A stretch of 63,906 nt of DNA, the filler included, from Octopus bimaculoides (Eukaryota): assembly GCF_001194135.2 (NCBI RefSeq). It is 6 parts of 6 records of this genome, joined end to end, with 100 filler letters (N's around TTAATTAATTAA, not from the genome) between each part and the next. Parts side by side here need not be neighbours in the genome. Positions count along the whole stretch, not along the records: positions 1 to 19,304 come from NC_068982.1; 5 more parts are not named here. One strand, given 5' to 3'. The translations under genes and the position numbers were made by a program. This document shows positions 547-19,135 of the stretch, piece by piece (position 1 is the first letter of the stretch; each line of letters begins with the position of its first letter). The notes below the pieces were generated by a model. That model saw nothing but the letters and a program-made list of their open reading frames with translations, made no database searches and was not told the DNA's origin.

Positions 547-740
547 ACGCAGGCATGGTTGTATGACACAGGCTTAGACGTGGCTGTGTGGTAAGAAGCG
601 TGCTTCCTTAGTACATGGTTTCCAGTTCAGTTCCACTGCGTGGCACATTGGGCAAGTGACTTCTACAATAGCCTCGGGCCGACCAAAGCCTTGTGAGTGG
701 ATTTGATGGACGGAAACTGAAAGAAACCCATCGTATATTA
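547..740 (+). mobile_element. tRNA-derived SINE, family A (CORE-like) head/body
   Basis: TGGCTGTGTGGTAAG (A-box-like), GTTCAGTTCC (B-box-like), then TTGGGCAAGTGACTTCTACAATAGCCTCGGGCCGACCAAAGCCTTGTGAGTGGATTTG. The same sequence recurs at 5406, 13833, 31581, 39650 and 40905. Confidence 0.85.
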
Positions 741-1260: not shown

Positions 1261-1336
<76 letters not shown>

Positions 1337-1378
1337 ACTGACAAGTAGGATTTAGATTATCCATAACCAATGGATTGA

Positions 1379-1430
1379 TCACTGCTGATGAGCTTTAATT
1401 CCAAGCGAAACTAGCTAGCTAGTATAGTGA
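1379..1430 (+). ncRNA. Type I hammerhead ribozyme (intact core)
   Basis: Stem I TCACTG(1379-84)/TAGTGA(1425-30); CTGATGA 1385-91; stem II GCTT(1392-95)/AAGC(1403-06) with a 7-nt loop; GAA 1407-09; stem III ACTAG(1410-14)/CTAGT(1419-23) with loop CTAG; predicted cleavage GUA after 1424. Confidence 0.88.
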
Positions 1431-1709
1431 CTTCGCTCGCAGTTATCAACCCCTGTCAGTACATAGACAATGTGCTTTTTGTGGTTATAAGGGTCTTTGA
1501 CTCTTTTTTTTTTTTTTGTCAATCTAGGTGCTACCCAACACACTCAGTCACAATCAGTAACAACTAAATTTTTCCTGTTAGGTTTTATATTGCATCTAGC
1601 CACCTTCGTTATTTTATAATTACCATTTTGCTGAATCACCCATTGATTCATATGGTAAATACTATATACAGACAGGTAGCATTTAGCTTAATCCTAAGTG
1701 ATACAGTAA

Positions 1710-1761
1710 TTACTGTTGATGAGCTTTAATTCCAAGCGAAACTAACATGCTAGTATAGTGA
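1710..1761 (+). ncRNA. Type I hammerhead ribozyme, second copy with C3U core substitution
   Basis: TTACTG/TAGTGA stem I; TTGATGA (1716-22); stem II identical to copy 1; GAA; stem III ACTA/TAGT with loop ACATGC; GUA site ending at 1755. Confidence 0.75.
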
Positions 1762-1944
1762 CCTAGCACACTGTGGAGAGATTATCTCCCCTGTCAGTAC
1801 GTAATGTGCATTTTATGGTTATAATTGTCTTTCACACTTGTTTTTAGCAATGTAACTGCTACCCTGCACCCTCAGTCATTATTAGTGATAATTGAAGTTT
1901 TCGTTTTTGGTTTTATATTGTGTCTAGCCACCTTCGTTATGTTA

Positions 1945-2016
<72 letters not shown>

Positions 2017-2829
2017 TGTGTGTGTGTGTGTGTATCAACTAATAGTTCATTTATCCGAAAAAAAGCAGTGAAAAACGTTAAAGCAGTAATATTTAGAAGA
2101 TTGTTTGTTGTGGCCATTGGTTTCGCATCTGTAAAGCGGTTAGCTCTATAAGCGACTCGTCTGACTCATTGACCGGAAGCACATAACCCTTATACAACTA
2201 GAGGGAGGAATACGTCAGAGTTAATTAATTTTGTAAACAAAAGGATTCAAGCCATAAAAAGCAACCTTCTAAGTATATATATATAAATGGAGTTAAACGC
2301 AGGTGTTATTCAAATTCCGACACATATTTCGAAGATATCACTGGTATAATTTCAAAGGAATAAAATGGTGTAAAACAATAAAATTTCTCTTCAGGGAAAT
2401 GAAGAAATTAAATTCGTCAATAAGACATTTTAATAGAAAATGATGGATATGTATAGTGATTAAGTGAACGCAAATAAGTTTGTTTCGAAAAAACGTTAGA
2501 TGATATAACGTTAAAGGTAGCCTGTAAAAAGAGGATAGGTTAAAGAAAGAAACCAAATAAATGAGAAGTATATAACTATATGTATATTAAATAAAACCAT
2601 ATAGACTTGGAAAAATATATTTAGTGAATGTGAAATTTAATGTTTAAATTTAATGTTTAAATATATAATGATAGATATCACTTATATGAACTAAAAGTGT
2701 GTTTCTGCCAATCTTTACATCGGTATGCACTCTCTATAACCGTGTTTACAAGGGGATTTTAGAAAAAATAATAAAAAATAGTTCAGAATTACAGAGAAGA
2801 CAGAATTCCTTGCCTTTGTCATAAGGTAT

Positions 2830-3166
2830 CGAGATTGAGAGACAGAAGATCGAAGAGCTAGGTTGGGAAAAATTCCTCATCCACCTTATTCTCCCGACCT
2901 TGCCCCAAAGGAGTAAGGTCGGGAGAATCATTTGTGGGGGACATAACTTTCGCAAGACAGGAGGAGGTCGAAACTGACATTTCAGAGTTATTCTCTTTGA
3001 AACCAAAAGAGTTTTACATTGATGGGATTAAAAAGCTTGTAAATAGATGGAAGTAAGTCATAGATAATCAGGGAAAGTACATTGATGATTAAATTTCAAT
3101 TAAATATAACGTTTGATCACTTGTTTTTTTATTCAAAATTCGGACAGAACTTATGGGATGACCTGA
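2830..3166 (+). mobile_element. Mariner transposase 3' remnant with right TIR
   Basis: Translates RQKIEELGWEKFPHPPYSPDLAP ... FARQEEVETDISELFSLKPKEFYIDGIKKLVNRWK*VIDNQGKYIDD*, with frameshifts. Ends in CGGACAGAACTTATGGGATGACCTGA (TIR-like). Confidence 0.85.
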
Positions 3167-3168
3167 TG

Positions 3169-3250
<82 letters not shown>

Positions 3251-6306: not shown

Positions 6307-6589
6307 NNNNNNNNNNNNNNNNGGAGGAGGAGGAGGAGGAGGAGGAGGAGGAGGAGGAACTCTCCCGGTGATGATGATATATGAATGTTCAGTAAAGAAG
6401 ACAAAACAATTCTAGTCAACTCAAAATGATAAAAGGAGGACAACATTCAAACACAGCCGCTGAACCGGAAAAAACATCACAAACCTACGAAACAAACAAA
6501 AGACTAGTGAAAATATATAAATACAGAACTGGTTATTTCCATATAAATACACTCAAGTAATTTATTCTATGTTTGTTATTTACAATATA

Positions 6590-6830: not shown

Positions 6831-7256
6831 GTGGCTATGTAAAATAATACCTTCACTTTGAGAGAACTCATTGATGCTATGTTTGGAATATTTCGGTGTA
6901 TGTATGGATTTCAAATGAGTCACAGCTGAAATCGTATATGGAAGGGAAGAAAAGTAACGCTTTCATAGAATTGCCTCGTTTCACCCTCACTAATTTTTGT
7001 ATATTCTGTTGTTCTATTATTCTTTAATTGGTTTCTGCCAGAGATTGTGGCCATGCTGGAGCGCCGACATTAACGCCAGTGCTTGTTTATTTTAGAAGCG
7101 AGTATAGAGTAAAAAAAAGTATTAATCCTAACAGCGGCGCCCCCAGCATGGCCACAGTCTCTGACTTAAACTTATAGTATCCTTAAAATAAAACCAAAAT
7201 ATATATCTAATCACATTTAAGAATTTTGTTGTATGTAGAAATAATCAATCACAAAC

Positions 7257-9295
7257 CTCATCACAAATGGATTCTCCGTCTGAGAAGTTGGCAAAGTTCA
7301 CCACTTGGTCACCATTATCCCACAGGGCATATATTGAAGAACTTCTCTCTTCAGTTTCCTTCCTTGATGTTACACTCATGTGGTGGTAGGCCCAACTGAC
7401 GGTCCTTGAAAATCCGTAATCATGTGGCGATAATAGATTCGATACATCGTTAATTATAACTCGATAACTACGTGGATTTCCAAATTCGTTGTTAAACAGT
7501 TTGTTATAAAACAACAGATATTTCGGACTCGATGATTCATAATCAAACGTTGCTTTAGTCTCTGTTTCAATTAAAACACGAGTTAAACGTTTCTGAATGT
7601 GATAATTATTTTTGATCAATCCATCCCAAGGAACATGTGTTCGATACTGTTGTAAATTCCAAGTTTCAAATCGATTTTCTGTTCCTTTCACGTCTAAGTC
7701 AACTTTGTAGTGAAACAAATGATTATGTATATTAGCAATGGTGGTTTTGCTTATTTGTACCCCATATGGACTTTTATTCGGGCTGTAGGAAGTTACCAAA
7801 AGCTTACCTGTAGAATGTATCTGGACTTCAATGGCACCATTTTTATGGAATAAATAATCTATAATGTAGTCGTACGAAAGAAATGTCACAACAGTTCTTA
7901 GAACAAGAATTTTGTCGAGCAAAGCGTCAAAAAAAGTTCCATGCATTGTGTTAAATTTATGCCGACTAAGAGGAACCGTTGTAGACTGGTCAAAAACACA
8001 CAATGCGTTTTCCATTTTCTTCATCCCACCATCATTGGAGGAATAGATGTAAGGAGACAAAAAGGTTGCGTGATTTGGACAATCAACACCAGCGATAAGA
8101 CCTTTGCTTCTTGTACCAAATAAGGCTGTACCATCAATAAAATTTAGCATTATTCCTGCTGGACTAAATCCTGAATATAAAACAGCAATTTCTTGGAGAC
8201 TCATTTCGTAAACAATTTGTTCGTTCCAATAACGAATGTTAAGAATACGTAAGCCAACAGACGGAGTTATATGAAAATGAAATTTCCAATTTAAATAATG
8301 AATAGTTGATTGTTTTAATATTGTGTATGACTTCTTTGAATCGCTTCCACCCGATGATTCTTCCTTTTGCTCATATTTGTGGAAATCACTGAAAGGTTTT
8401 TCTTGGAAGACAGTTCTTTGGTAAAATCTAGTCGTGTTTTCGTTGGAAGTTTTATCATAATCCTGTATGAGATGCGTAAGACTATTATACATTTTATTGT
8501 CAAACCAAACTTTACCGACAGTCCAGTCAGATGGAGTTGGACTAGTTATGTCAGCCTCAAACTGAAAGTTTACAGGTGAAATATCGTAGATAGCTTTATA
8601 AGAAAACCCTAACCAGAGTAAACGACGTTTAGATTTACCGAGAGCTTCGGGTACAGGGGACAGGTAAAATTGCAAACAATGTGCTATGCAACTTATTGGA
8701 AGGGCATCATACTCTTTCAATAAGAAATCCCTGGTTTTATCTTCAACCTTTTTTATAATATAAAACTTCAGGTTCTTCATCTCCATGACAGTTATTGGCC
8801 GTTGATAAAATGGGATGGTCCGAATTTTATGCATGTAAGTAATATTCGAAAGAGGTCCTATAACATATTCCTCAACACAAGGAATAGGTTTATTTCCTCG
8901 AAATATTACGGCCTTAGCTTCACGGTTTGGTAAATATGTTTTTTCATTAAGATAGCGTAAAATATTTTTTTTCTCTGGCATTTTCAGCTCGATAAAATGA
9001 ATAAACGAATCACTGAGAAGAGCTTTCTTTGCAGTGACAATCGAGAGATTACTTCTCTCCTCCAAGAACTTCACGACCAACTCTATTTCATTTGGCAGCA
9101 GTTCATTGTACCACTCAGCTGTCTCTATCACGGGCTCAGCTGGTTTCTCTTCACCCATGTAACAGTTTCTTTCACTGCTGATTACAATCACTGCAATTAA
9201 TAACGACAAACTAACTGCGATCAAGACATAAGTTATCGTTCTCCAAAATTTAAGCGTTTGAGACAGGGCCATATCTTCTGTTCTCCAATTAAAAT
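7257..9295 (-). CDS. Copper-containing amine oxidase, membrane-anchored AOC3/VAP-1/AOC1-like; main coding exon
   Basis: Uninterrupted 675-codon ORF. N-terminal signal anchor ITYVLIAVSLSLLIAVIVIS; REAKAVIF; YEMSLQEIAVLYSG; active-site base FIDG; VDCP...LCVF disulfide pair; TPQ site TFLSYDY; copper ligands IHNHLFHYKVDLDV. Acceptor ttataatttcAG at 9297-9296. Donor GAG|GTTTGT at 7257/7256 (phase 0), at the position preceding the DLVAW..HIPH last exon of vertebrate AOCs. Confidence 0.93.
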
Positions 9296-9539
9296 CTGAA
9301 ATTATAAATCAAACACAGATCATGATTTCAGTATTTTGTAACTGAATAAATTAAATCATTTTAAATTTAGAAACGGAAGTTGGAAATTTCATTGATCTTT
9401 TAAATTATTTTTCTCTGGGCCTAGGACTCATGTGGCCGATTAATCGGTTTCCATGGCGTATAAGTGACTGAAATCATAATATTCACCCCTGAATGGTCTG
9501 TTGCAGAGTTCAATGTCAGCAATTTTAAAAGAAAGGACA

Positions 9540-9738
9540 AATCGATTTCGTCGACCCCAGTACTTAACTGGTACTTTATTTTATACTTTATTTTAACTGG
9601 TACTTTGTTTTATCATGCCCTGAAGAAATGAAAGGCAAAGATGAGCTCAGCAGACTTTGAATTCAGAATGTAAAGAGCCGAAAGAAATACCGCTTAGTAT
9701 TTTGTTCGACGTTCCAACGATTCTGCCAGCTCACGGCC
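9540..9738 (-). mobile_element. tRNA-derived SINE family B
   Basis: Reverse complement of GAGCTGGCAGAATCGTT...TTCTGAATTCAAA...CCTTTCATTTC...AAGTACCAGTT...CTGGGGTCGA, with a small internal duplication. Confidence 0.75.
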
Positions 9739-11223
9739 TTGATCTTTTACATATCATATATCTAATAGCACGTCTAGTTATTATTTCAGAAAGTATCCAC
9801 TTCCTATGGTAAACATATAACAATGAATAACTAACAATGATGAACCTTCGTCTGTAGAGCTTTTCATATGGTGAAACCAAATTCCTTTTACATACGCAGT
9901 TAAAGCCCTTTAAAATATGTATGACTATCACAGCTTTATACATCATCGCTTAACAAATATATGATTTTATGTCTCATTAAAGGAAGTTAACATTTCGTTA
10001 ATTTGTGTGAAGAACACCATACACGAGTTATAAAGATTCCAACAGTCGTATTTACAAGGTCTCCAGTTTCGGTTGAAATCGTCCCATTAACGTCGCTAAA
10101 CCTTTTAAAAGGCTCGCAAGACGGTTTCTTGAAACCAAGCCAACCAGCAAGAGACCTAGAGGTAAACCAAAAACGAGGTGGTTGGATAATATCCATAGTC
10201 TCAGTTGGTTACACTTGGGAATCCAACAAGAAAGTGTAATTACGACTGCTTTTAATAGGACCCTATGGAAGAGATGACTGAGGACTTTACCCTCAAGACC
10301 GTCTCAGGAATATTAGAAGATGAATGGATAGGCAATATTGTTTATAGATATATGGTGAATAATTAAAATATAGCGTTGAGTGTTATTTTTTGGGGATATG
10401 TAAAGTATGTGTGTGTTTACGGTGTTGTTCTGTGAAACCAGGTTCGCAGTTAACCATTGACCATCGTATAGTGTTTGAAAGACCTCTGTAGATTGAGGTC
10501 TTGTTGATGTCAAGTTGAACTGCTCTGATTTCTCCATTGCTTTTAAGAACGCGTAAAAGATAAGATCTTTAAAGTCATATTGGAAGGCATTGAGGTGAAA
10601 AGATAAAAGAGATCCAGGGTGATAAAAGGCATCATCATTTATCATCATTTTACATTGCCTTTGATTAGATGATGCACTCGGCCCAAAATATCAAAGGTCA
10701 CTGGTTTTTTATGCCAAAAGATAGCTTGGAGGAATTTTAAAATGTTAGAGGAAACGGATGCTTTCAGGAAGGAAACGGGTTGATGTGGATATCTTCGTTG
10801 CAACATCAGAAATATCAAAACAGCTAATTAATAGGAATTGGATGAGATATAAAATGAAAGCACCCATCAAGAATATTTGGAAGAAGGTTTTACTGATATC
10901 CTAATGATAGACATGGGAATCGTTTCACAGAATCTAGAGTTTTATAACTAAGTGGCAGTAGAGGGTGTATATACCATGCAATTTTGAAGGATGAGAGATT
11001 TATATCGTTAAAAAACCGTGCGCATTAATAAAGGATAGTAAAGAGGATTGCAGTTTAGAGCGGAGGTAGAATATATCGGGCAGTAGCTTGGTCTCTTTTA
11101 ACGTATTACGTCCATGTGGTACCACATTGTACATGTATGTGTGTGTACGTATATATATAGAGGGAGAGGGGGGAGGGAGAGAGGGAGGGAGGAAAAGAGA
11201 GAGAGAAAGAGAGAAAGAGATAA

Positions 11224-11607: not shown

Positions 11608-12378
11608 NNNNNNNNNNNNNNNNNNNNNNNNNNNNNNNNNNNNNNNNNNNNNNNNNNNNNNNNNNNNNNNNNNNNNNNNNNNNNNNNNNNNNNNNNNNNN
11701 NNNNNNNNNNNNNNNNNNNNNNNNNNNNNNNNNNNNNNNNNNNNNNNNNNNNNNNNNNNNNNNNNNNNNNNNNNNNNNNNNNNNNNNNNNNNNNNNNNNN
11801 NNNNNNNNNNNNNNNNNNNNNNNNNNNNNNNNNNNNNNNNNNNNNNNNNNNNNNNNNNNNNNNNNNNNNNNNNNNNNNNNNNNNNNNNNNNNNNNNNNNN
11901 NNNNNNNNNNNNNNNNNNNNNNNNNNNNNNNNNNNNNNNNNNNNNNNNNNNNNNNNNNNNNNNNNNNNNNNNNNNNNNNNNNNNNNNNNNNNNNNNNNNN
12001 NNNNNNNNNNNNNNNNNNNNNNNNNNNNNNNNNNNNNNNNNNNNNNNNNNNNNNNNNNNNNNNNNNNNNNNNNNNNNNNNNNNNNNNNNNNNNNNNNNNN
12101 NNNNNNNNNNNNNNNNNNNNNNNNNNNNNNNNNNNNNNNNNNNNNNNNNNNNNNNNNNNNNNNNNNNNNNNNNNNNNNNNNNNNNNNNNNNNNNNNNNNN
12201 NNNNNNNNNNNNNNNNNNNNNNNNNNNNNNNNNNNNNNNNNNNNNNNNNNNNNNNNNNNNNNNNNNNNNNNNNNNNNNNNNNNNNNNNNNNNNNNNNNNN
12301 NNNNNNNNNNNNNNNNNNNNNNNNNATATATATATATATATATATATATACATACATATATATAAACAAGTAGGCTGT

Positions 12379-12490: not shown

Positions 12491-13059
12491 TCTACTTTGT
12501 GATCACTTCGACACCTGACACTGTTCATCTGTTCAAGCAACGTAGATTTGATGGAGGAAGTGAGTTATTGTACAGCACATACATTTCATTGTTATATTCA
12601 AATCCCGGACTACGAGAGACTACCATCTCACACACAGAAACATACACACACACACACACACACGCACACACATAGATAGAGAGATAGAGAGAGAGATATC
12701 AGTATGTAGTGTATATATGCTAACACCAAATTTACTGTAAGTGCTATTCAGTTATCTTATAATCATGAAGACAGAATTTTTTCTAAAGCTTAACCGAAAA
12801 CCAGACTCTTGTTGCAGGCGTCCTTTTGTTCTCCATGATGTAGGAAAGGGACAAACTGAACAATTCCATTTACTTCCAATATTTTCCTTCGTACACTTCA
12901 GAATTTTGATACAATTGTTGAATATAATCGGTTTAATCCGTGAAATCTGCTTATAGAATTCTCCTTTTCCAGTAGAAAAAAAATATTGTTTGTTTCCGAA
13001 GGAAATGGGGCGAAATGGCGGAAATATCGAAAATGTTAGTTTCTAATTTTGGCATAATG

Positions 13060-13706
13060 CCACCAAGTTCGGGTGGAGGTGATAAATCGATTACATCGAC
13101 CCCAGCGTTCAACTGATACTTATTTTATCGTCCCTGAAATGATGAAAGACAAAATCGACCTCAGCAGGATTTGAACTCAGGACATAAGCACGGACGAAAC
13201 ACAGCTTAGCATTTTGCCCAGTGAGCTAACAATTCTGCCAGTTCGCCACCTTAAATATCAAAGAATATTCTTTTCTACTCTAGGCACAAGACCCAAAATT
13301 TTAGTGGATGGACCAGTCGATTAGATCGTCGACCCCAGTATGCAATTGGTACTTAATTTATCGACTCCGAAAGGATGAAAGGCAAAGTCGACATCGGCAG
13401 TATTCAAACTCAGAATGTAAAGACAGACGAAATACCACTAAGCATTTTGCCCGGCGTCCTAACGTTCCTGCCAACTCGCTGAAGAATATTCTTTTCTCCT
13501 CTAGACACAAGGCCCGAAATTTGGTGGGAGGGGTCCAGTCGATTAGATCGACACCAGTACGCAACTGGTACTTAATTTATCGACTCCGAAAGGATGAAAG
13601 ATAAAGTCGACTTCGGCGGAATTTGAACTCAGAGAGTAAAGGCAGACGAAATACCGCTAAGCATTTCGCCCGGCGTCCCAACATTTTTGCCAGCTCACCG
13701 CCTTAA
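13060..13706 (-). mobile_element. Three head-to-tail copies of SINE family B
   Basis: Three successive ~210-bp homologous units, each followed on the + strand by (AATATC)(G/A)AAGAATATT. Confidence 0.88.
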
Positions 13707-14066: not shown

Positions 14067-14335
14067 NNNNNNNNNNNNNNNNNNNNNNNNNNNNNNNNNN
14101 NNNNNNNNNNNNNNNNNNNNNNNNNNNNNNNNNNNNNNNNNNNNNNNNNNNNNNNNNNNNNNNNNNNNNNNNNNNNNNNNNNNNNNNNNNNNNNNNNNNN
14201 NNNNNNNNNNNNNNNNNNNNNNNNNNNNNNNNNNNNNCGACTAAAACTCTTCAAGGCAGTACCCCAACAAGGCAGTACCCCAACAAGGCAGTACCCCAAC
14301 AAGGCCGTAGTCCAATGACCGAAACAAGTAAAAAA
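13833..14335 (+). mobile_element. SINE family A, full structure (head-(GT)n-tail) spanning a gap
   Basis: Head 13833-14003, (GT)n, N gap, tail GACTAAAACTCTTCAAGG...GAAACAAGTAAAA with a 15-bp unit AGGCAGTACCCCAAC triplicated. Confidence 0.8.
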
Positions 14336-15754: not shown

Positions 15755-15965
15755 TTGTTGTTTCAAATTTTGCTACGAGAGTAGCAATTGTTTGAAGGAA
15801 GGGGATGAGTCAATTACATCGACCTCAGTGTTCAACAGGTATTTATTTTATCGACCCCGAAAGGATGAAGTCGACTTCAGTGGAATTTGAACTCATAACG
15901 TAGCGACGGGCGAAATACCGCTAAGCATTACGTCCAGCATGCTAACGATTCTGCCAGTTCGCTGC
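15755..15965 (-). mobile_element. SINE family B with (AAT)n tail
   Basis: Reverse-complement family B sequence. Its tail meets a plus-strand (AAT)n at 15680-15729. Confidence 0.8.
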
Positions 15966-15972
15966 TTCGTAT

Positions 15973-17383
15973 ATTTTACCCCAGTGTCTCTTTGATGGCA
16001 TGCATTGCTCTCTCAATCAAAATAGGCTGGCCGTGGACTTTTGCAACTGGAATTGACACGGAAGATTGCCACGGTTGGCCTAAACACTGATCTGAAAAAC
16101 TCTGATGACTGAATGTTAAAACTTCTCTTAATGCATGAAAACAAGAAAGCATCATACTCAGTAACAAAACAGGCATAGAAATATCTAAGTGAATTCCAAA
16201 TACAACAAATCCCAGAATTAGACGTACTGGAAACAAGCACAGAAAAAGCTAAAGGTATGAAAACCCTTGCTAAAACTGTTGCTTTAGATATTCTTACTAA
16301 TAAATGGCAAGTAAAACCTCTCAATGGCAAATACCCAAAGAGAGCTAATAATGCTGATGTTCACAAGGCCCTTACCCATCAATTGTTAGTGTCTTCTGGC
16401 TTAAAATCAGAGACAGATAGGTTTATCATAGCAACCTAAGATCAATGCCTACCTACAAGAAGCTACCAGGCCAACATCTTAAAGAACAGCAACAGCTCAA
16501 TATGTCGGGTGTGTAAACAACAAAATGAAATCATCGAATATGTTGTCTCCAGGTGCAGTTTTCTTGTGTCTACAGAGTATCTCAGCAGGCATGATAGAGC
16601 GGCAAAGTATATTCACTTGGTAATTTGCAAACACATGGACCTGCCCCGTGATAGAAACTGGTGGGAATACAAACCAACTCCAGTGCTTGAAAATGATCAC
16701 ACCTCACTCCTTTGGAACTCTACTGTTCAAACTAACAGAAAGATAGATGCAAATATACCAGACATTATGTTGAAAGATCTCAGGCAAAAACATGCCTTCT
16801 CATCGATATGACTAACTCAATCGACATAAATACATCTGTCAAGACTTACCTAAAACCGAGCAAGTATAAAGATCTTGAAATAGAAATTGGCAAAATGTGG
16901 AACCTTCAGAATAAAACAATACCTGTTGTCATAGGAGCTCTAGGAATGATAGCAAAAGGAGCTGATTGTTACCTATCTCAGACACCGGGAAACCCAAAAT
17001 GGAAGAAATTCGAAAAATAGTGCTCATAGGAACTGCTCATATCCTAAGAAAAATATTGTCTATATAATCCCCAAAACATTTTAATCAGTAAACAGTATCA
17101 AAACACTTAAATGTACATAATAGCAAACACCTTTTACTGTCATCATATCATCACACTATCATCTTACCATCAAATTACTTTTAAAACAAACTTCTAATCT
17201 TCTTGTTTTGACAGGCATTCTCTAGAACAATATTCTGTGCAAAACCAAAAGTGTGGCACCATAGTCATAGCACCAATTTGAACTTCTAACTGCTGTCTCT
17301 CGAGGTCTCTGGGTGAGACTTGGAGTCAATTTGTACAAATACAAAGAAAAAGCCAAACATATAATAATAACAATAATAATAAC

Positions 17384-17454: not shown

Positions 17455-18062
17455 CGAAAGTGTGACTTACATTGTTAGTGCTTGTGCAGAAAAAGTACAA
17501 GCATAAACACGACAGAGTAACCCAAAACCTCCACGGGCTACTATGCCGTAAATGTGGATATGTTACAGGTCCTTGGTACCAACATACACTGGAAAAGGTA
17601 ATGGACGAAAAGAAGAAGGCAAAAATCCTCTGGGACTTTGATTTCCATACAAACAAAGTGTTAGAGCACCGAAGGACAAATAAGAGTGCCTAATAATCGA
17701 CGTAGCAGCGCCAGGAGATAAACATATCATCATGAAAGAAATAGAAAATGTTGATAAATATGGAGACCTGAGAATTGAGATCGCTAAAATGTGGCAGCTA
17801 AGAGTCGAATATAAAGGTTATCCCTATTGTAATCGGAGCATTGGGTTCAATATCACCCAATCTGAAAAAACATCTGAAAACCTTAGAGACACCTTACAAT
17901 CTAGATGTATTGCAAATGTTGGCATTGCTTGAAACTGCACGCATATTGCGTAAAGTACTCTCTGTCTGAGGTCCTTGTTGTGACTTGACAAACAATACAA
18001 ACCCCCGGTAGACACAATATCTTCAATCAACAACCTCACGATATTGTATACTGTGCGACGTC

Positions 18063-18133: not shown

Positions 18134-19135
18134 GCCACAAAACACGAACAAAACAAAAGACAGTTTCAGTCTTTAAGGAAGCTGACAAATACAAAAAAAG
18201 AAGTCATAGTACCTAACAACTATGAAGAAAAAGAAGAAACATCAAAAGCTGTAAAACAACTGAAATCCAAACTAAGACTAGAACAACAACGAATCATGAT
18301 AAAACGATGGCAAGAAAAGCCCCTTCATGGCAAATATTGGGTGAAGCTAAACAGAAAAGTAATAGAAAAAGCAAAACCCTAACAATGACGGAAAAGCTCA
18401 GGGCTCAAAGCAGAGACTGAAGGATTTTTAACTGCAGCACAAAATCAAAGCCTTCCCACCAGAAATCACCAAAAACACATAATGTAAAGAAATACAAGTA
18501 ACTGCAGAATATGTGGCGACGGAGAAGAAACAATAAATCATATTGTCTCTGGCTGCCCAGTCCTGGCTAAGAAGGAATATGTTCACAGGCAGGACAGAAT
18601 TGGGACCTATATGCACTGGAAGCTATGACAGCACTATGGAATAACAACAGAAAAAAGATAGTACATGCTAGAAAAGGTCACTGAAAGTGAGAAAGCAACC
18701 ATACTCTGGGATATGCTAATACACACGGATAGAGAAATTAAGGCCAATAGACCAGATATTGTTGTCAAAGATCATGAAGGAAAAAAATGCTTTCTAATTG
18801 ATGTACCAATACCAGCAGATGACAACGTTTCCCTAAAAGAAATGGAGAAACTTTCAAAATACAAAGACCTGGAAATAGAGGTAACTGAAATGTAGATCAT
18901 AGTACACGCATTAGTTATGATAAAGAAACATTCAGACGAAAACATAACAAAAACACCAGGATTTGCAGGTATATATAACATACAGAAAATAGCACTAGTA
19001 GGCAGCGCACACATCCTACGTAAAACACTTTCAATACAGTGAAAATAAGAGCACCACAACAAACACAGCATATACCCAAGGCACACAGAGCTGCGCTCAG
19101 TAGTGATAAAGCACGTGATAAAAATAAGACTACTA

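What the first reader, a model, noticed from the sequence alone, without database searches (positions are those of the whole stretch)
1340..1945. Hammerhead-ribozyme-delimited ~331-nt tandem repeat: a candidate cephalopod non-LTR retrozyme
Seen in sequence: two homologous units, each with a type I hammerhead fold. Predicted GUA cleavage sites fall after 1424 and 1755, exactly 331 nt apart. The ribozyme core and stem II (GATGAGCTTTAATTCCAAGCGAAACTA) are identical between copies while the intervening sequence has many substitutions and indels, which suggests selection on the ribozyme or concerted evolution. Established: animal non-LTR retrozymes (newt satellite 2, schistosome SM-alpha, cnidarian and bivalve families) are 150-400-nt tandem repeats with type I hammerheads that self-process into linear and circular monomer RNAs and spread using autonomous retroelement RTs, with Penelope-like elements proposed as partners. 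Inference: this is such a family in an octopus-like genome, lies in a probable intron of the amine oxidase gene on the opposite strand, and is not a standard SINE. I cannot tell whether the family is already catalogued.
Basis: partly seen in the sequence, partly recalled or inferred. Interest (0 to 1): 0.88.

Follow-up and report, generated by a model that had tools for sequence, protein, structure and literature searches.

The report
Decayed hammerhead-ribozyme tandem repeat in octopus
An intron of an Octopus bimaculoides amine oxidase gene holds two diverged tandem copies of a 331-nt non-coding unit, each with a hammerhead self-cleaving RNA motif, which is most likely a dead copy of a known kind of small mobile element (a non-LTR retrozyme) and is not a new kind of system.

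Summary
There are 1.83 tandem units: 1340-1670 and 1671-1944, 78-81% identical, period 331. Each carries a type I hammerhead motif with GUA cleavage sites after 1424 and 1755.

Copy 1 (1379-1430) has every canonical core base and helices of 6, 4 and 5 bp. No motif of that quality turned up in 55 Mb of shuffled sequence. Neither copy reaches an Rfam gathering score (best 21 bits against 56).

The unit is non-coding, 35% G+C and not tRNA-like. It sits between two (TG)n arrays, antisense in the last intron of the O. bimaculoides copper amine oxidase gene.

This anatomy fits an old, decayed dimer of a non-LTR retrozyme. In that model the RNA is cut by its hammerheads, ligated into a circle, and copied back by Penelope-like-element enzymes.

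I found no second copy, no empty orthologous site and no transcript. Family membership, mobility and cleavage are therefore untested; no octopus genome could be searched by DNA.

Verdict: a probable new member of a known kind, of modest interest.

The parts
1264..1335 (+). (TG)36 microsatellite directly abutting the 5' end of the repeat
   Evidence: TRF 100% matches; sequence read
1340..1670 (+). Unit 1, the full 331-nt monomer
   Evidence: Alignment A1; the repeat finder D16 and D18
1379..1430 (+). Hammerhead 1, type I with all core bases canonical. Helix I UCACUG/UAGUGA, core CUGAUGA, helix II GCUU/AAGC with loop UAAUUCC, then GAAA, helix III ACUAG/CUAGU with loop CUAG. Cleavage is predicted after A1424.
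   Evidence: Descriptor hit. Energy of the hammerhead fold is -8.4 against an MFE of -10.3 kcal/mol. Weak Rfam hammerhead matches. The homodimer MFE is a double hammerhead with a 14-bp palindromic helix III, -34.0 against -20.6 kcal/mol for two monomers.
1425..1755 (+). Predicted 331-nt monomer RNA that would be released if both ribozymes cut
   Evidence: Coordinates. As a circle the MFE is -60.0 kcal/mol, z=-1.0 against shuffles, G+C 35%.
1505..1519 (+). T15 run inside unit 1 (TTGTTTTT in unit 2); a variable homopolymer that would terminate Pol III
   Evidence: Sequence; alignment
1671..1944 (+). Unit 2, 3'-truncated (274 nt); it lacks the last ~57 nt of the unit
   Evidence: Alignment A1
1710..1761 (+). 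Hammerhead 2, degenerate. C3 is U at 1716 (UUGAUGA). Helix I keeps 6 bp through a C-G to U-G change. Helix III is 4 bp plus an A.C mismatch, with a palindromic CAUG centre. The GUA site ends at 1755.
   Evidence: Found only by the relaxed descriptor. Hammerhead fold energy -3.7 kcal/mol. No Rfam match at E<=10.
1945..2033 (+). (TG)44 microsatellite directly abutting the 3' end, on the same strand as the upstream array
   Evidence: TRF; sequence
7257..9305 (-). Large exon of the host copper amine oxidase gene; the repeat lies about 5.3 kb into the following intron, antisense
   Evidence: tblastn 99.6% identity to O. bimaculoides XP_014772217 residues 10-692; Pfam Cu_amine_oxid domains

Best explanation
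This is an old, decayed genomic copy (a dimer of 1.83 units) of a non-autonomous retroelement of the non-LTR retrozyme type, carrying a hammerhead ribozyme.

In the live family, a + strand transcript of tandem units would be cut by the type I hammerhead in each unit, here after A1424 and A1755. That releases a 331-nt RNA with 5'-OH and 2',3'-cyclic phosphate ends. A host tRNA ligase (RtcB type) joins the ends into a circle. A Penelope-like element (PLE) reverse transcriptase and endonuclease then copy the RNA back into DNA as tandem units, here into a (TG)n microsatellite.

Shown here: the tandem anatomy, the complete hammerhead 1, the microsatellite flanks, the lack of coding capacity, and the antisense intronic position.

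Inferred from published families: transcription, cleavage, circularisation and PLE-mediated integration.

At this locus hammerhead 2 carries C3-to-U and a weakened helix III, and the units differ by about 22%. The locus is therefore probably not a source of circles today. Helix III of hammerhead 1 is a perfect 14-nt palindrome, A(CUAG)3U. The ribozyme could therefore fold alone (5-bp helix III) or as a double hammerhead between neighbouring units.
For: - Copy 1 has all canonical core bases, helices of 6/4/5 bp and type I topology.
- No motif of that quality occurred in 55 Mb of shuffles or in 172 kb of real octopod DNA.
- Helix I of 6 bp and helix II of 4 bp are the canonical metazoan type I sizes (PMC4209133).
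- The motif recurs at a 331-nt period in a non-coding unit of 35% G+C. This matches the published definition: ~150-450-bp tandem repeats, dimers to multimers, G+C below 45-50%, no LTR, PBS or PPT (PMC7229834).
- A period of 331 nt, not ~3 kb, argues against a tandem of an autonomous PLE.
- The hammerhead is more conserved than the rest of the unit (90% against 75%, p=0.023).
- Both loop III variants (CUAG, CAUG) are palindromic. The predicted homodimer of hammerhead 1 is exactly a double hammerhead, as in newt and PLE hammerheads (PMC4209133, PMC7229834).
- (TG)n arrays on the same strand flank both ends, as expected for an insertion into a microsatellite. A microsatellite insertion bias is reported for PLE endonucleases (PMC8557442).
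- PLEs exist in octopods. An RT-thumb plus GIY-YIG remnant, followed by a degenerate hammerhead-like motif, lies in the O. sinensis copy of this same gene. PLEs are annotated in O. vulgaris (PMC13282606).
- Non-LTR retrozymes co-occur with PLEs and resemble their pLTRs (bioRxiv 10.64898/2026.07.22.740005).
Against: - No other copy of the family was found anywhere I could search.
- No Rfam gathering-level match.
- The hammerhead is not the unconstrained MFE fold.
- The circular monomer is not unusually stable, z=-1.0.
- No recognisable loop 1 / loop 2 tertiary-contact bases.
- Hammerhead 2 is mutated at a catalytic position.
- The T15 run would stop Pol III.
- No empty orthologous site could be recovered, so insertion is inferred, not shown.
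- K2P of 0.26 between units exceeds the ~7-11% intron divergence from O. vulgaris. The element should therefore predate that split, yet it could not be located there.
Confidence: 0.6

Rival explanations
1. A single hammerhead-bearing fragment landed here once, for example a solo retrozyme monomer or a 5'-truncated end of a PLE. It was later duplicated in place by slippage or unequal exchange between the surrounding TG arrays. On this view the tandem arrangement says nothing about rolling-circle or circular-RNA copying.
For: There are only 1.83 units. The units are 22% diverged, which fits an old local duplication. The region is dense in microsatellites. Solo monomers are common in published families (bioRxiv 10.64898/2026.07.22.740005).
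Against: The duplication junction (1650-1675) carries no TG repeat or other obvious substrate for exchange. Head-to-tail units each carrying a hammerhead are the typical product of the retrozyme cycle (PMC7229834).
Confidence: 0.2
2. It is a piece of the pseudo-LTR or 3' end of an autonomous Penelope-like element, not a separate non-autonomous family.
For: PLE pLTRs carry type I hammerheads (PMC4209133). Retrozymes and pLTRs are sequence relatives (bioRxiv 10.64898/2026.07.22.740005). The single metagenome hit to a loosened version of this hammerhead pattern lies in a ~3-kb RT-encoding PLE-like element (L004), although that similarity was imposed by the pattern.
Against: A profile of 80 PLE-like RTs found no RT or GIY-YIG coding remnant in the window; the best hit near the repeat had E=8.3. 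The period is 331 nt, not the element length. Metazoan PLE hammerheads are usually minimal, with helix III of 0-2 bp, helix II of 6-8 bp and helix I of 4-5 bp (PMC4209133). This one has 5, 4 and 6 bp.
Confidence: 0.1
3. It is a host-serving ribozyme or regulatory RNA of the amine oxidase gene.
For: It is intronic. A few conserved intronic hammerheads exist in amniotes (PMC7229834, introduction).
Against: It lies antisense to the gene, so the pre-mRNA does not contain the ribozyme. It was not found in the O. vulgaris, O. sinensis or Argonauta loci held. One copy is mutated at C3.
Confidence: 0.03
4. It is a chance hammerhead-like motif in an ordinary minisatellite.
For: Rfam scores are far below gathering. 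The MFE fold is not the hammerhead.
Against: No comparable motif occurred in 55 Mb of shuffles. My analytic estimate is about 0.2 such motifs per 2.7-Gb genome on both strands. The motif is the best-conserved block of the unit.
Confidence: 0.02

Closest known systems
Metazoan non-LTR retrozymes (Cervera and de la Pena 2020, PMC7229834): coral, mussel and axolotl families, including the ~330-bp newt/axolotl repeats
   Same: A type I hammerhead in each unit of a short head-to-tail repeat. The unit is 331 nt; the axolotl Rtz_331 unit is 330 bp. Low G+C, no coding capacity, no LTR, PBS or PPT. Helix I is 6 bp and helix II is 4 bp. The centre of helix III is palindromic, allowing a double hammerhead.
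   Different: Only 1.83 units at a single known locus. Helix III is 5 bp, longer than the 1-2 bp of amphibian motifs. No recognisable loop 1 / loop 2 contact bases. The second ribozyme is mutated at C3. Expression and circles are untested.
Hammerheads in pseudo-LTRs of Penelope-like elements (Cervera and de la Pena 2014, PMC4209133; Craig et al. 2021, PMC8557442)
   Same: Type I topology, a palindromic helix III, an association with retroelements, and insertion into microsatellites.
   Different: No RT or EN coding sequence here, and a period of 331 nt. PLE motifs are minimal (helix III 0-2 bp, helix II 6-8 bp, helix I 4-5 bp). The octopod PLE remnant I found (L002) carries a different motif, with helix II GAGC/GCUC and loop GUAG.
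Schistosome SM-alpha and cave-cricket pDo500 hammerhead repeats (from my own knowledge and the introduction of PMC7229834)
   Same: Dispersed or tandem short repeats with type I hammerheads in invertebrates.
   Different: No sequence similarity was tested or claimed. SM-alpha is SINE-like with a Pol III promoter, whereas this unit has no tRNA-like part and contains a T15 run.

Membership tests
Hammerhead ribozyme, type I | Conserved core: C3 U4 G5 A6 N7 G8 A9, G12 A13 A14, A15.1-U16.1 and H17, with a G10.1-C11.1 pair | tested here: met
   Copy 1 (1379-1430) has all of them, with a GUA site. Copy 2 fails at C3 (U at 1716). The only natural variant reported is the paired change U3-A8 (PMC4209133), and here position 8 stays G.
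Hammerhead ribozyme, type I | Three helices around the core, with helices II and III closed by loops and helix I open | tested here: met
   Helices are 6/4/5 bp in copy 1 and 6/4/4 bp in copy 2. Fold energies are -8.4 and -3.7 kcal/mol, within 2 kcal/mol of the MFE.
Hammerhead ribozyme, type I | Score at or above the gathering threshold of an Rfam hammerhead model | tested here: not met
   No hits at gathering. The best scores are 21.0 bits (gathering 56.3) and 15.8 bits (gathering 52) for copy 1, and nothing for copy 2.
Hammerhead ribozyme, type I | Tertiary contacts between loop 1 and loop 2 | tested here: inconclusive
   Loop 2 is UAAUUCC. Beyond 6 bp of helix I there is no closing stem conserved between the two units (read). 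Two copies are too few to judge.
Hammerhead ribozyme, type I | Self-cleavage at the predicted site | not testable with these tools
   This needs in vitro transcription with Mg2+.
Non-LTR retrozyme | A type I hammerhead in each unit of a 150-450-bp head-to-tail repeat | tested here: met
   Period 331 nt, 1.83 units, a motif in each. The second motif is degenerate, so the locus fails the preprint's 'active' criterion of an intact hammerhead in all units.
Non-LTR retrozyme | Low G+C; no coding capacity; no LTR, PBS, PPT or tRNA-like part | tested here: met
   G+C is 35%. There are stops in all six frames. ARAGORN finds nothing. No Rfam RNA gene.
Non-LTR retrozyme | Many dispersed copies in the genome with conserved ribozymes | tested here: inconclusive
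   None in the 19-kb window or in 153 kb of octopod loci. No octopus genome could be searched by DNA.
Non-LTR retrozyme | Expressed as linear and circular monomer RNA | not testable with these tools
   No transcriptome search by DNA was available. Exact-ORF look-ups found nothing.
Non-LTR retrozyme | Autonomous PLE partners present in the same genome | tested here: met
   An EN+ PLE remnant lies in O. sinensis L002 at 47986-47066 on the minus strand. PLEs are annotated in O. vulgaris (PMC13282606). O. bimaculoides itself was not examined directly.
Penelope-like element pseudo-LTR | Adjacent RT/GIY-YIG ORF, with a repeat period equal to the element length | tested here: not met
   No PLE RT or EN hit in the window. 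The period is 331 nt.

The most novel reading that the evidence does not exclude
Octopus genomes carry a still-active retrozyme family not yet described in cephalopods. Its ribozyme has helix III expanded into a (CUAG)3 palindrome, so it can cut either alone or as a double hammerhead. Its copies are placed specifically into (TG)n microsatellites by a PLE endonuclease. That would make it a tractable system for asking how retrozyme circles are reverse-transcribed and targeted.
Probability: 0.15. Interest if true: 0.5.

Novelty: new member of a known kind. Interest (0 to 1): 0.3.

Why it matters
If the family is confirmed genome-wide, it would extend hammerhead retrozymes to cephalopods. Cephalopod genomes are repeat-rich, and their repeat annotations so far list PLEs but no ribozyme elements (PMC13282606 mentions neither hammerheads nor retrozymes). 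The clean (TG)n-element-(TG)n structure would also be a concrete hint that retrozymes use the microsatellite-biased integration of PLE endonucleases. As a single decayed locus, it matters little for the host gene, because it is antisense in an intron.

Tried and rejected
- Rfam at gathering score: nothing.
- Tandem Repeats Finder: did not report the 331-nt period.
- Exact scan of JGI metagenome contigs for the 26-nt core: 0 hits.
- Loosened scan of the same collection: one hit, L004, a ~3-kb RT-encoding PLE-like element. Its similarity to the octopus motif is imposed by the pattern, so it is not evidence of homology.
- Viral contigs: one ordinary phage hammerhead (L007). Nothing for the non-ribozyme block TCTAGCCACCTTCGTTAT.
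- Orthologous loci:
  - Argonauta hians L001, O. sinensis L002 and O. vulgaris L003 hold no copy.
  - Synteny with O. vulgaris holds from window 7300 down to 3165 and breaks at a (GATA)n array.
  - O. sinensis has an assembly gap just after the exon.
  - No empty site could therefore be read.
- Route to octopus PLEs:
  - A profile of L004-like RTs found a PLE remnant in L002.
  - Its relatives in the protein collection sit on unnamed ENA contigs that carry neither octopod SINEs nor the unit.
- Exact look-ups of two ORFs inside the repeat in public assemblies: none.
- Full-text search for the ribozyme sequence in papers: none.
- Literature search for hammerheads or retrozymes in cephalopods: nothing specific.
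- A rod-like, unusually stable circular fold: rejected (z=-1.0).
- A SINE reading: rejected.

Full report
**What is there**

Window 1336-1944 lies between a (TG)36 array (1264-1335) and a (TG)44 array (1945-2033). It consists of one full unit (1340-1670) and one 3'-truncated unit (1671-1944).
- The units align at 81% mean column identity with several indels.
- Over 269 ungapped columns, p-distance is 0.22 and K2P is 0.26.
- The repeat finder recovers the two halves at spacings of 331 and 328 nt (D18 and D16).
- Tandem Repeats Finder does not report the period.

**The ribozyme motif**

The 27-nt pattern YTGATGAGCTTTAATTCCAAGCGAAAC occurs exactly twice in the window, with none in 200 shuffles.

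Copy 1 (1379-1430) reads UCACUG-CUGAUGA-GCUU[UAAUUCC]AAGC-GAAA-CUAG[CUAG]CUAG-U-A | UAGUGA.
- Every canonical core base is present.
- G10.1-C11.1 and A15.1-U16.1 are in place.
- Helices are 6, 4 and 5 bp.
- Helix I is open, which makes it type I.
- Cleavage is predicted after G1422-U1423-A1424.

Copy 2 (1710-1761) keeps helix II and the GAAA.
- It begins UUGAUGA, so core position 3 is U (window 1716).
- Helix III is reduced to 4 bp plus an A.C mismatch.

C3 pairs with G8 in the active fold (established structural knowledge). The natural variant reported is the double change U3-A8 (PMC4209133). U3 with G8 is therefore expected to be strongly impaired.

**Is it more than chance?**

A descriptor scan I wrote finds copy 1 under strict rules and copy 2 only when position 3 may be Y.

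| Sequence scanned | Helices >=6/4/4 bp, loops <=10 nt | Relaxed descriptor |
|---|---|---|
| 1,500 dinucleotide shuffles of the window (55 Mb, both strands) | 0 | 3 |
| 153 kb of real octopod DNA from other loci | 0 | 1 (loose, long loops) |

My back-of-envelope estimate for a motif of copy 1's quality is about 0.2 per 2.7-Gb genome. On the other side:
- Rfam gives nothing at gathering score.
- In E-value mode only weak matches to copy 1 appear: RAGATH-1-hammerhead 21.0 bits (E=0.56) and HH9 15.8 bits (E=0.64).
- The unconstrained MFE fold of the 65-nt stretch is not the hammerhead.
- The hammerhead fold lies within 2 kcal/mol of the MFE: -8.4 against -10.3 for copy 1, and -3.7 against -5.2 for copy 2.

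I conclude that the motif is a genuine hammerhead by descriptor, but it is not certified by any curated model.

**Conservation between the units**

The 52-nt hammerhead is 90% identical between the units and the rest is 75% identical (47/52 against 163/216, Fisher p=0.023). Other conserved blocks are CCCCTGTCAGTAC (1450-1462) and TCTAGCCACCTTCGTTAT (1595-1612). With two copies this is only suggestive.

**Helix III**

In copy 1 the segment ACUAGCUAGCUAGU is a perfect palindrome. The predicted homodimer of the 52-mer is exactly the double hammerhead: a 14-bp intermolecular helix III, helix I formed in trans, and both helix II hairpins kept. Its energy is -34.0 kcal/mol against -20.6 for two monomers.

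In copy 2 the centre has changed from CUAG to CAUG, which is also palindromic. By my count, one in three double changes would keep that property.

Small palindromic helix III loops and dimeric action are the hallmark of metazoan type I and PLE hammerheads (PMC4209133, PMC7229834). Here the helix is long enough that monomeric action is also plausible.

**Nature of the unit**

- All six frames are full of stops.
- G+C is 35%.
- ARAGORN finds no tRNA-like part.
- No Rfam RNA gene matches.
- As a circle, the 331-nt monomer folds to -60.0 kcal/mol, not notably better than shuffles (z=-1.0).
- Unit 1 contains a T15 run (1505-1519), which is TTGTTTTT in unit 2.

**Context**

- The large ORF at 7245-9272 on the minus strand is a copper amine oxidase exon.
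- Residues 10-692 of O. bimaculoides XP_014772217 match window 9305-7257 at 99.6% identity. The window is therefore O. bimaculoides.
- The final exon (residues 692-749) is absent from the window. It lies 46 kb downstream in O. sinensis and 32 kb downstream in Argonauta hians.
- The repeat therefore sits about 5.3 kb into the last intron of that gene model, on the opposite strand. The host pre-mRNA does not contain the ribozyme.
- Neighbours are ordinary repeats: an octopod SINE at 548-740 and a mariner transposase remnant at about 2790-3090.
- No PLE coding remnant is present in the window.

**Search for relatives**

- None in the window, and none in the orthologous loci of Argonauta hians (L001, 54 kb), O. 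sinensis (L002, 76 kb) or O. vulgaris (L003, 22 kb).
- Synteny with O. vulgaris runs from window 7300 to 3165 at 79-96% identity. It then breaks at a (GATA)n array.
- O. sinensis has an assembly gap next to the exon. An empty or filled orthologous site could not be read.
- Collection scans gave no relative. An exact metagenome scan found nothing.
- A loosened pattern hit one contig, L004. It is a ~3.0-kb tandem or circular RT-encoding PLE-like element with a minimal hammerhead, A[CUAG]U as helix III.
- That hit shows the pattern picks out real PLE hammerheads. The similarity is by construction, so it is not evidence of homology.
- An EN+ PLE remnant (RT thumb plus GIY-YIG) followed by a degenerate hammerhead-like CTGTTGAAGAGCGTAGGCTCGAATC lies in the O. 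sinensis intron. Octopods therefore do carry hammerhead-bearing PLEs, though of a different motif family.
- No octopus genome could be queried by DNA. Copy number, arrays and covariation remain unknown.

**Interpretation**

The anatomy meets the structural definition of a non-LTR retrozyme: a type I hammerhead in each unit of a 150-450-bp head-to-tail repeat, low G+C, and no coding or LTR features (PMC7229834).
- The 331-nt period argues against a tandem of an autonomous PLE.
- Same-strand (TG)n on both sides is what an insertion into a microsatellite would leave.
- PLE endonucleases show a microsatellite insertion bias (PMC8557442).
- A 2026 preprint ties retrozymes to PLE pLTRs (10.64898/2026.07.22.740005).

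The most likely mechanism is the published one: transcription of tandem units, hammerhead cleavage, ligation to a circle by a tRNA ligase, and PLE-mediated reverse transcription and integration. Only the DNA anatomy is shown here; every RNA step is inferred.

The 22% divergence between units and the C3-to-U change indicate an old, inactive copy. That divergence exceeds the ~7-11% intron divergence from O. vulgaris. Either the element predates that split, or the units were already different when inserted.

**Rivals**

- A local duplication of a solo hammerhead-bearing fragment (0.2).
- A PLE pseudo-LTR fragment (0.1).
- A host-serving ribozyme (0.03, contradicted by strand).
- Chance (0.02).

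**Novelty and score**

I found no report of hammerhead repeats or retrozymes in cephalopods in the searchable literature. Such elements are known 'from molluscs to arthropods' (PMC7229834), so this is a probable new member of a known kind. With one decayed locus and no family evidence, interest is modest (0.3).

Noticed in passing
L004 1-3210 (JGI metagenome contig Ga0335396_10039955): A ~3015-nt unit with a ~195-nt terminal direct repeat, so tandem or circular. It carries a minimal type I hammerhead at about 366-410 (helix III is 1 bp plus a CUAG loop), an ORF with no Pfam match (507-1283) and an RT ORF (1562-3205). More than 120 relatives all sit on 2-6-kb contigs of metagenomes and sequencing-run assemblies, which suggests a large group of small PLE-like elements.
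   Followed up: partly
L002 47986-47066 (-) and about 46520-46495 (-): In O. sinensis, inside the same amine oxidase intron, there is a frameshifted EN+ Penelope-like remnant (RT thumb plus GIY-YIG). About 550 nt further on is a degenerate hammerhead-like CTGTTGAAGAGCGTAGGCTCGAATC, with helix II GAGC/GCUC.
   Followed up: partly
window 2790-3090 (+): Remnant of a mariner-type transposase C-terminus (..HPPYSPDLAP.. read by eye), directly next to the (GATA)21 array at 3165-3250 where synteny with O. vulgaris breaks.
   Followed up: no
window 548-740; also 9511-9743, 13029-13706, 15779-15971: Two SINE-like families. The first has many copies in all three octopod loci fetched and is often preceded by a (GATA)n or (TG)n array. 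The second occurs as three adjacent ~225-nt copies at 13029-13706.
   Followed up: no
window 16509-17020, 17472-17932, 18665-18895 (+): Short ORFs sharing a ...KYKDLEIE..KMW... motif, each followed by an (ATA)n or (AAT)n array. They look like repeated 3' ends of a retroelement ORF, but have no Pfam match.
   Followed up: partly
window 6307-6322, 11608-12325, 14067-14237: Runs of N (assembly gaps) inside the piece. ORFs listed across them are artefacts.
   Followed up: yes
window 7245-7257 (-): The 675-aa ORF reads through the splice donor (..ICDE|VCD*). The O. vulgaris annotation (CAI9717539, 675 aa) appears to have taken this read-through as the protein end. The O. bimaculoides and O. sinensis models splice to a distant last exon.
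   Followed up: partly
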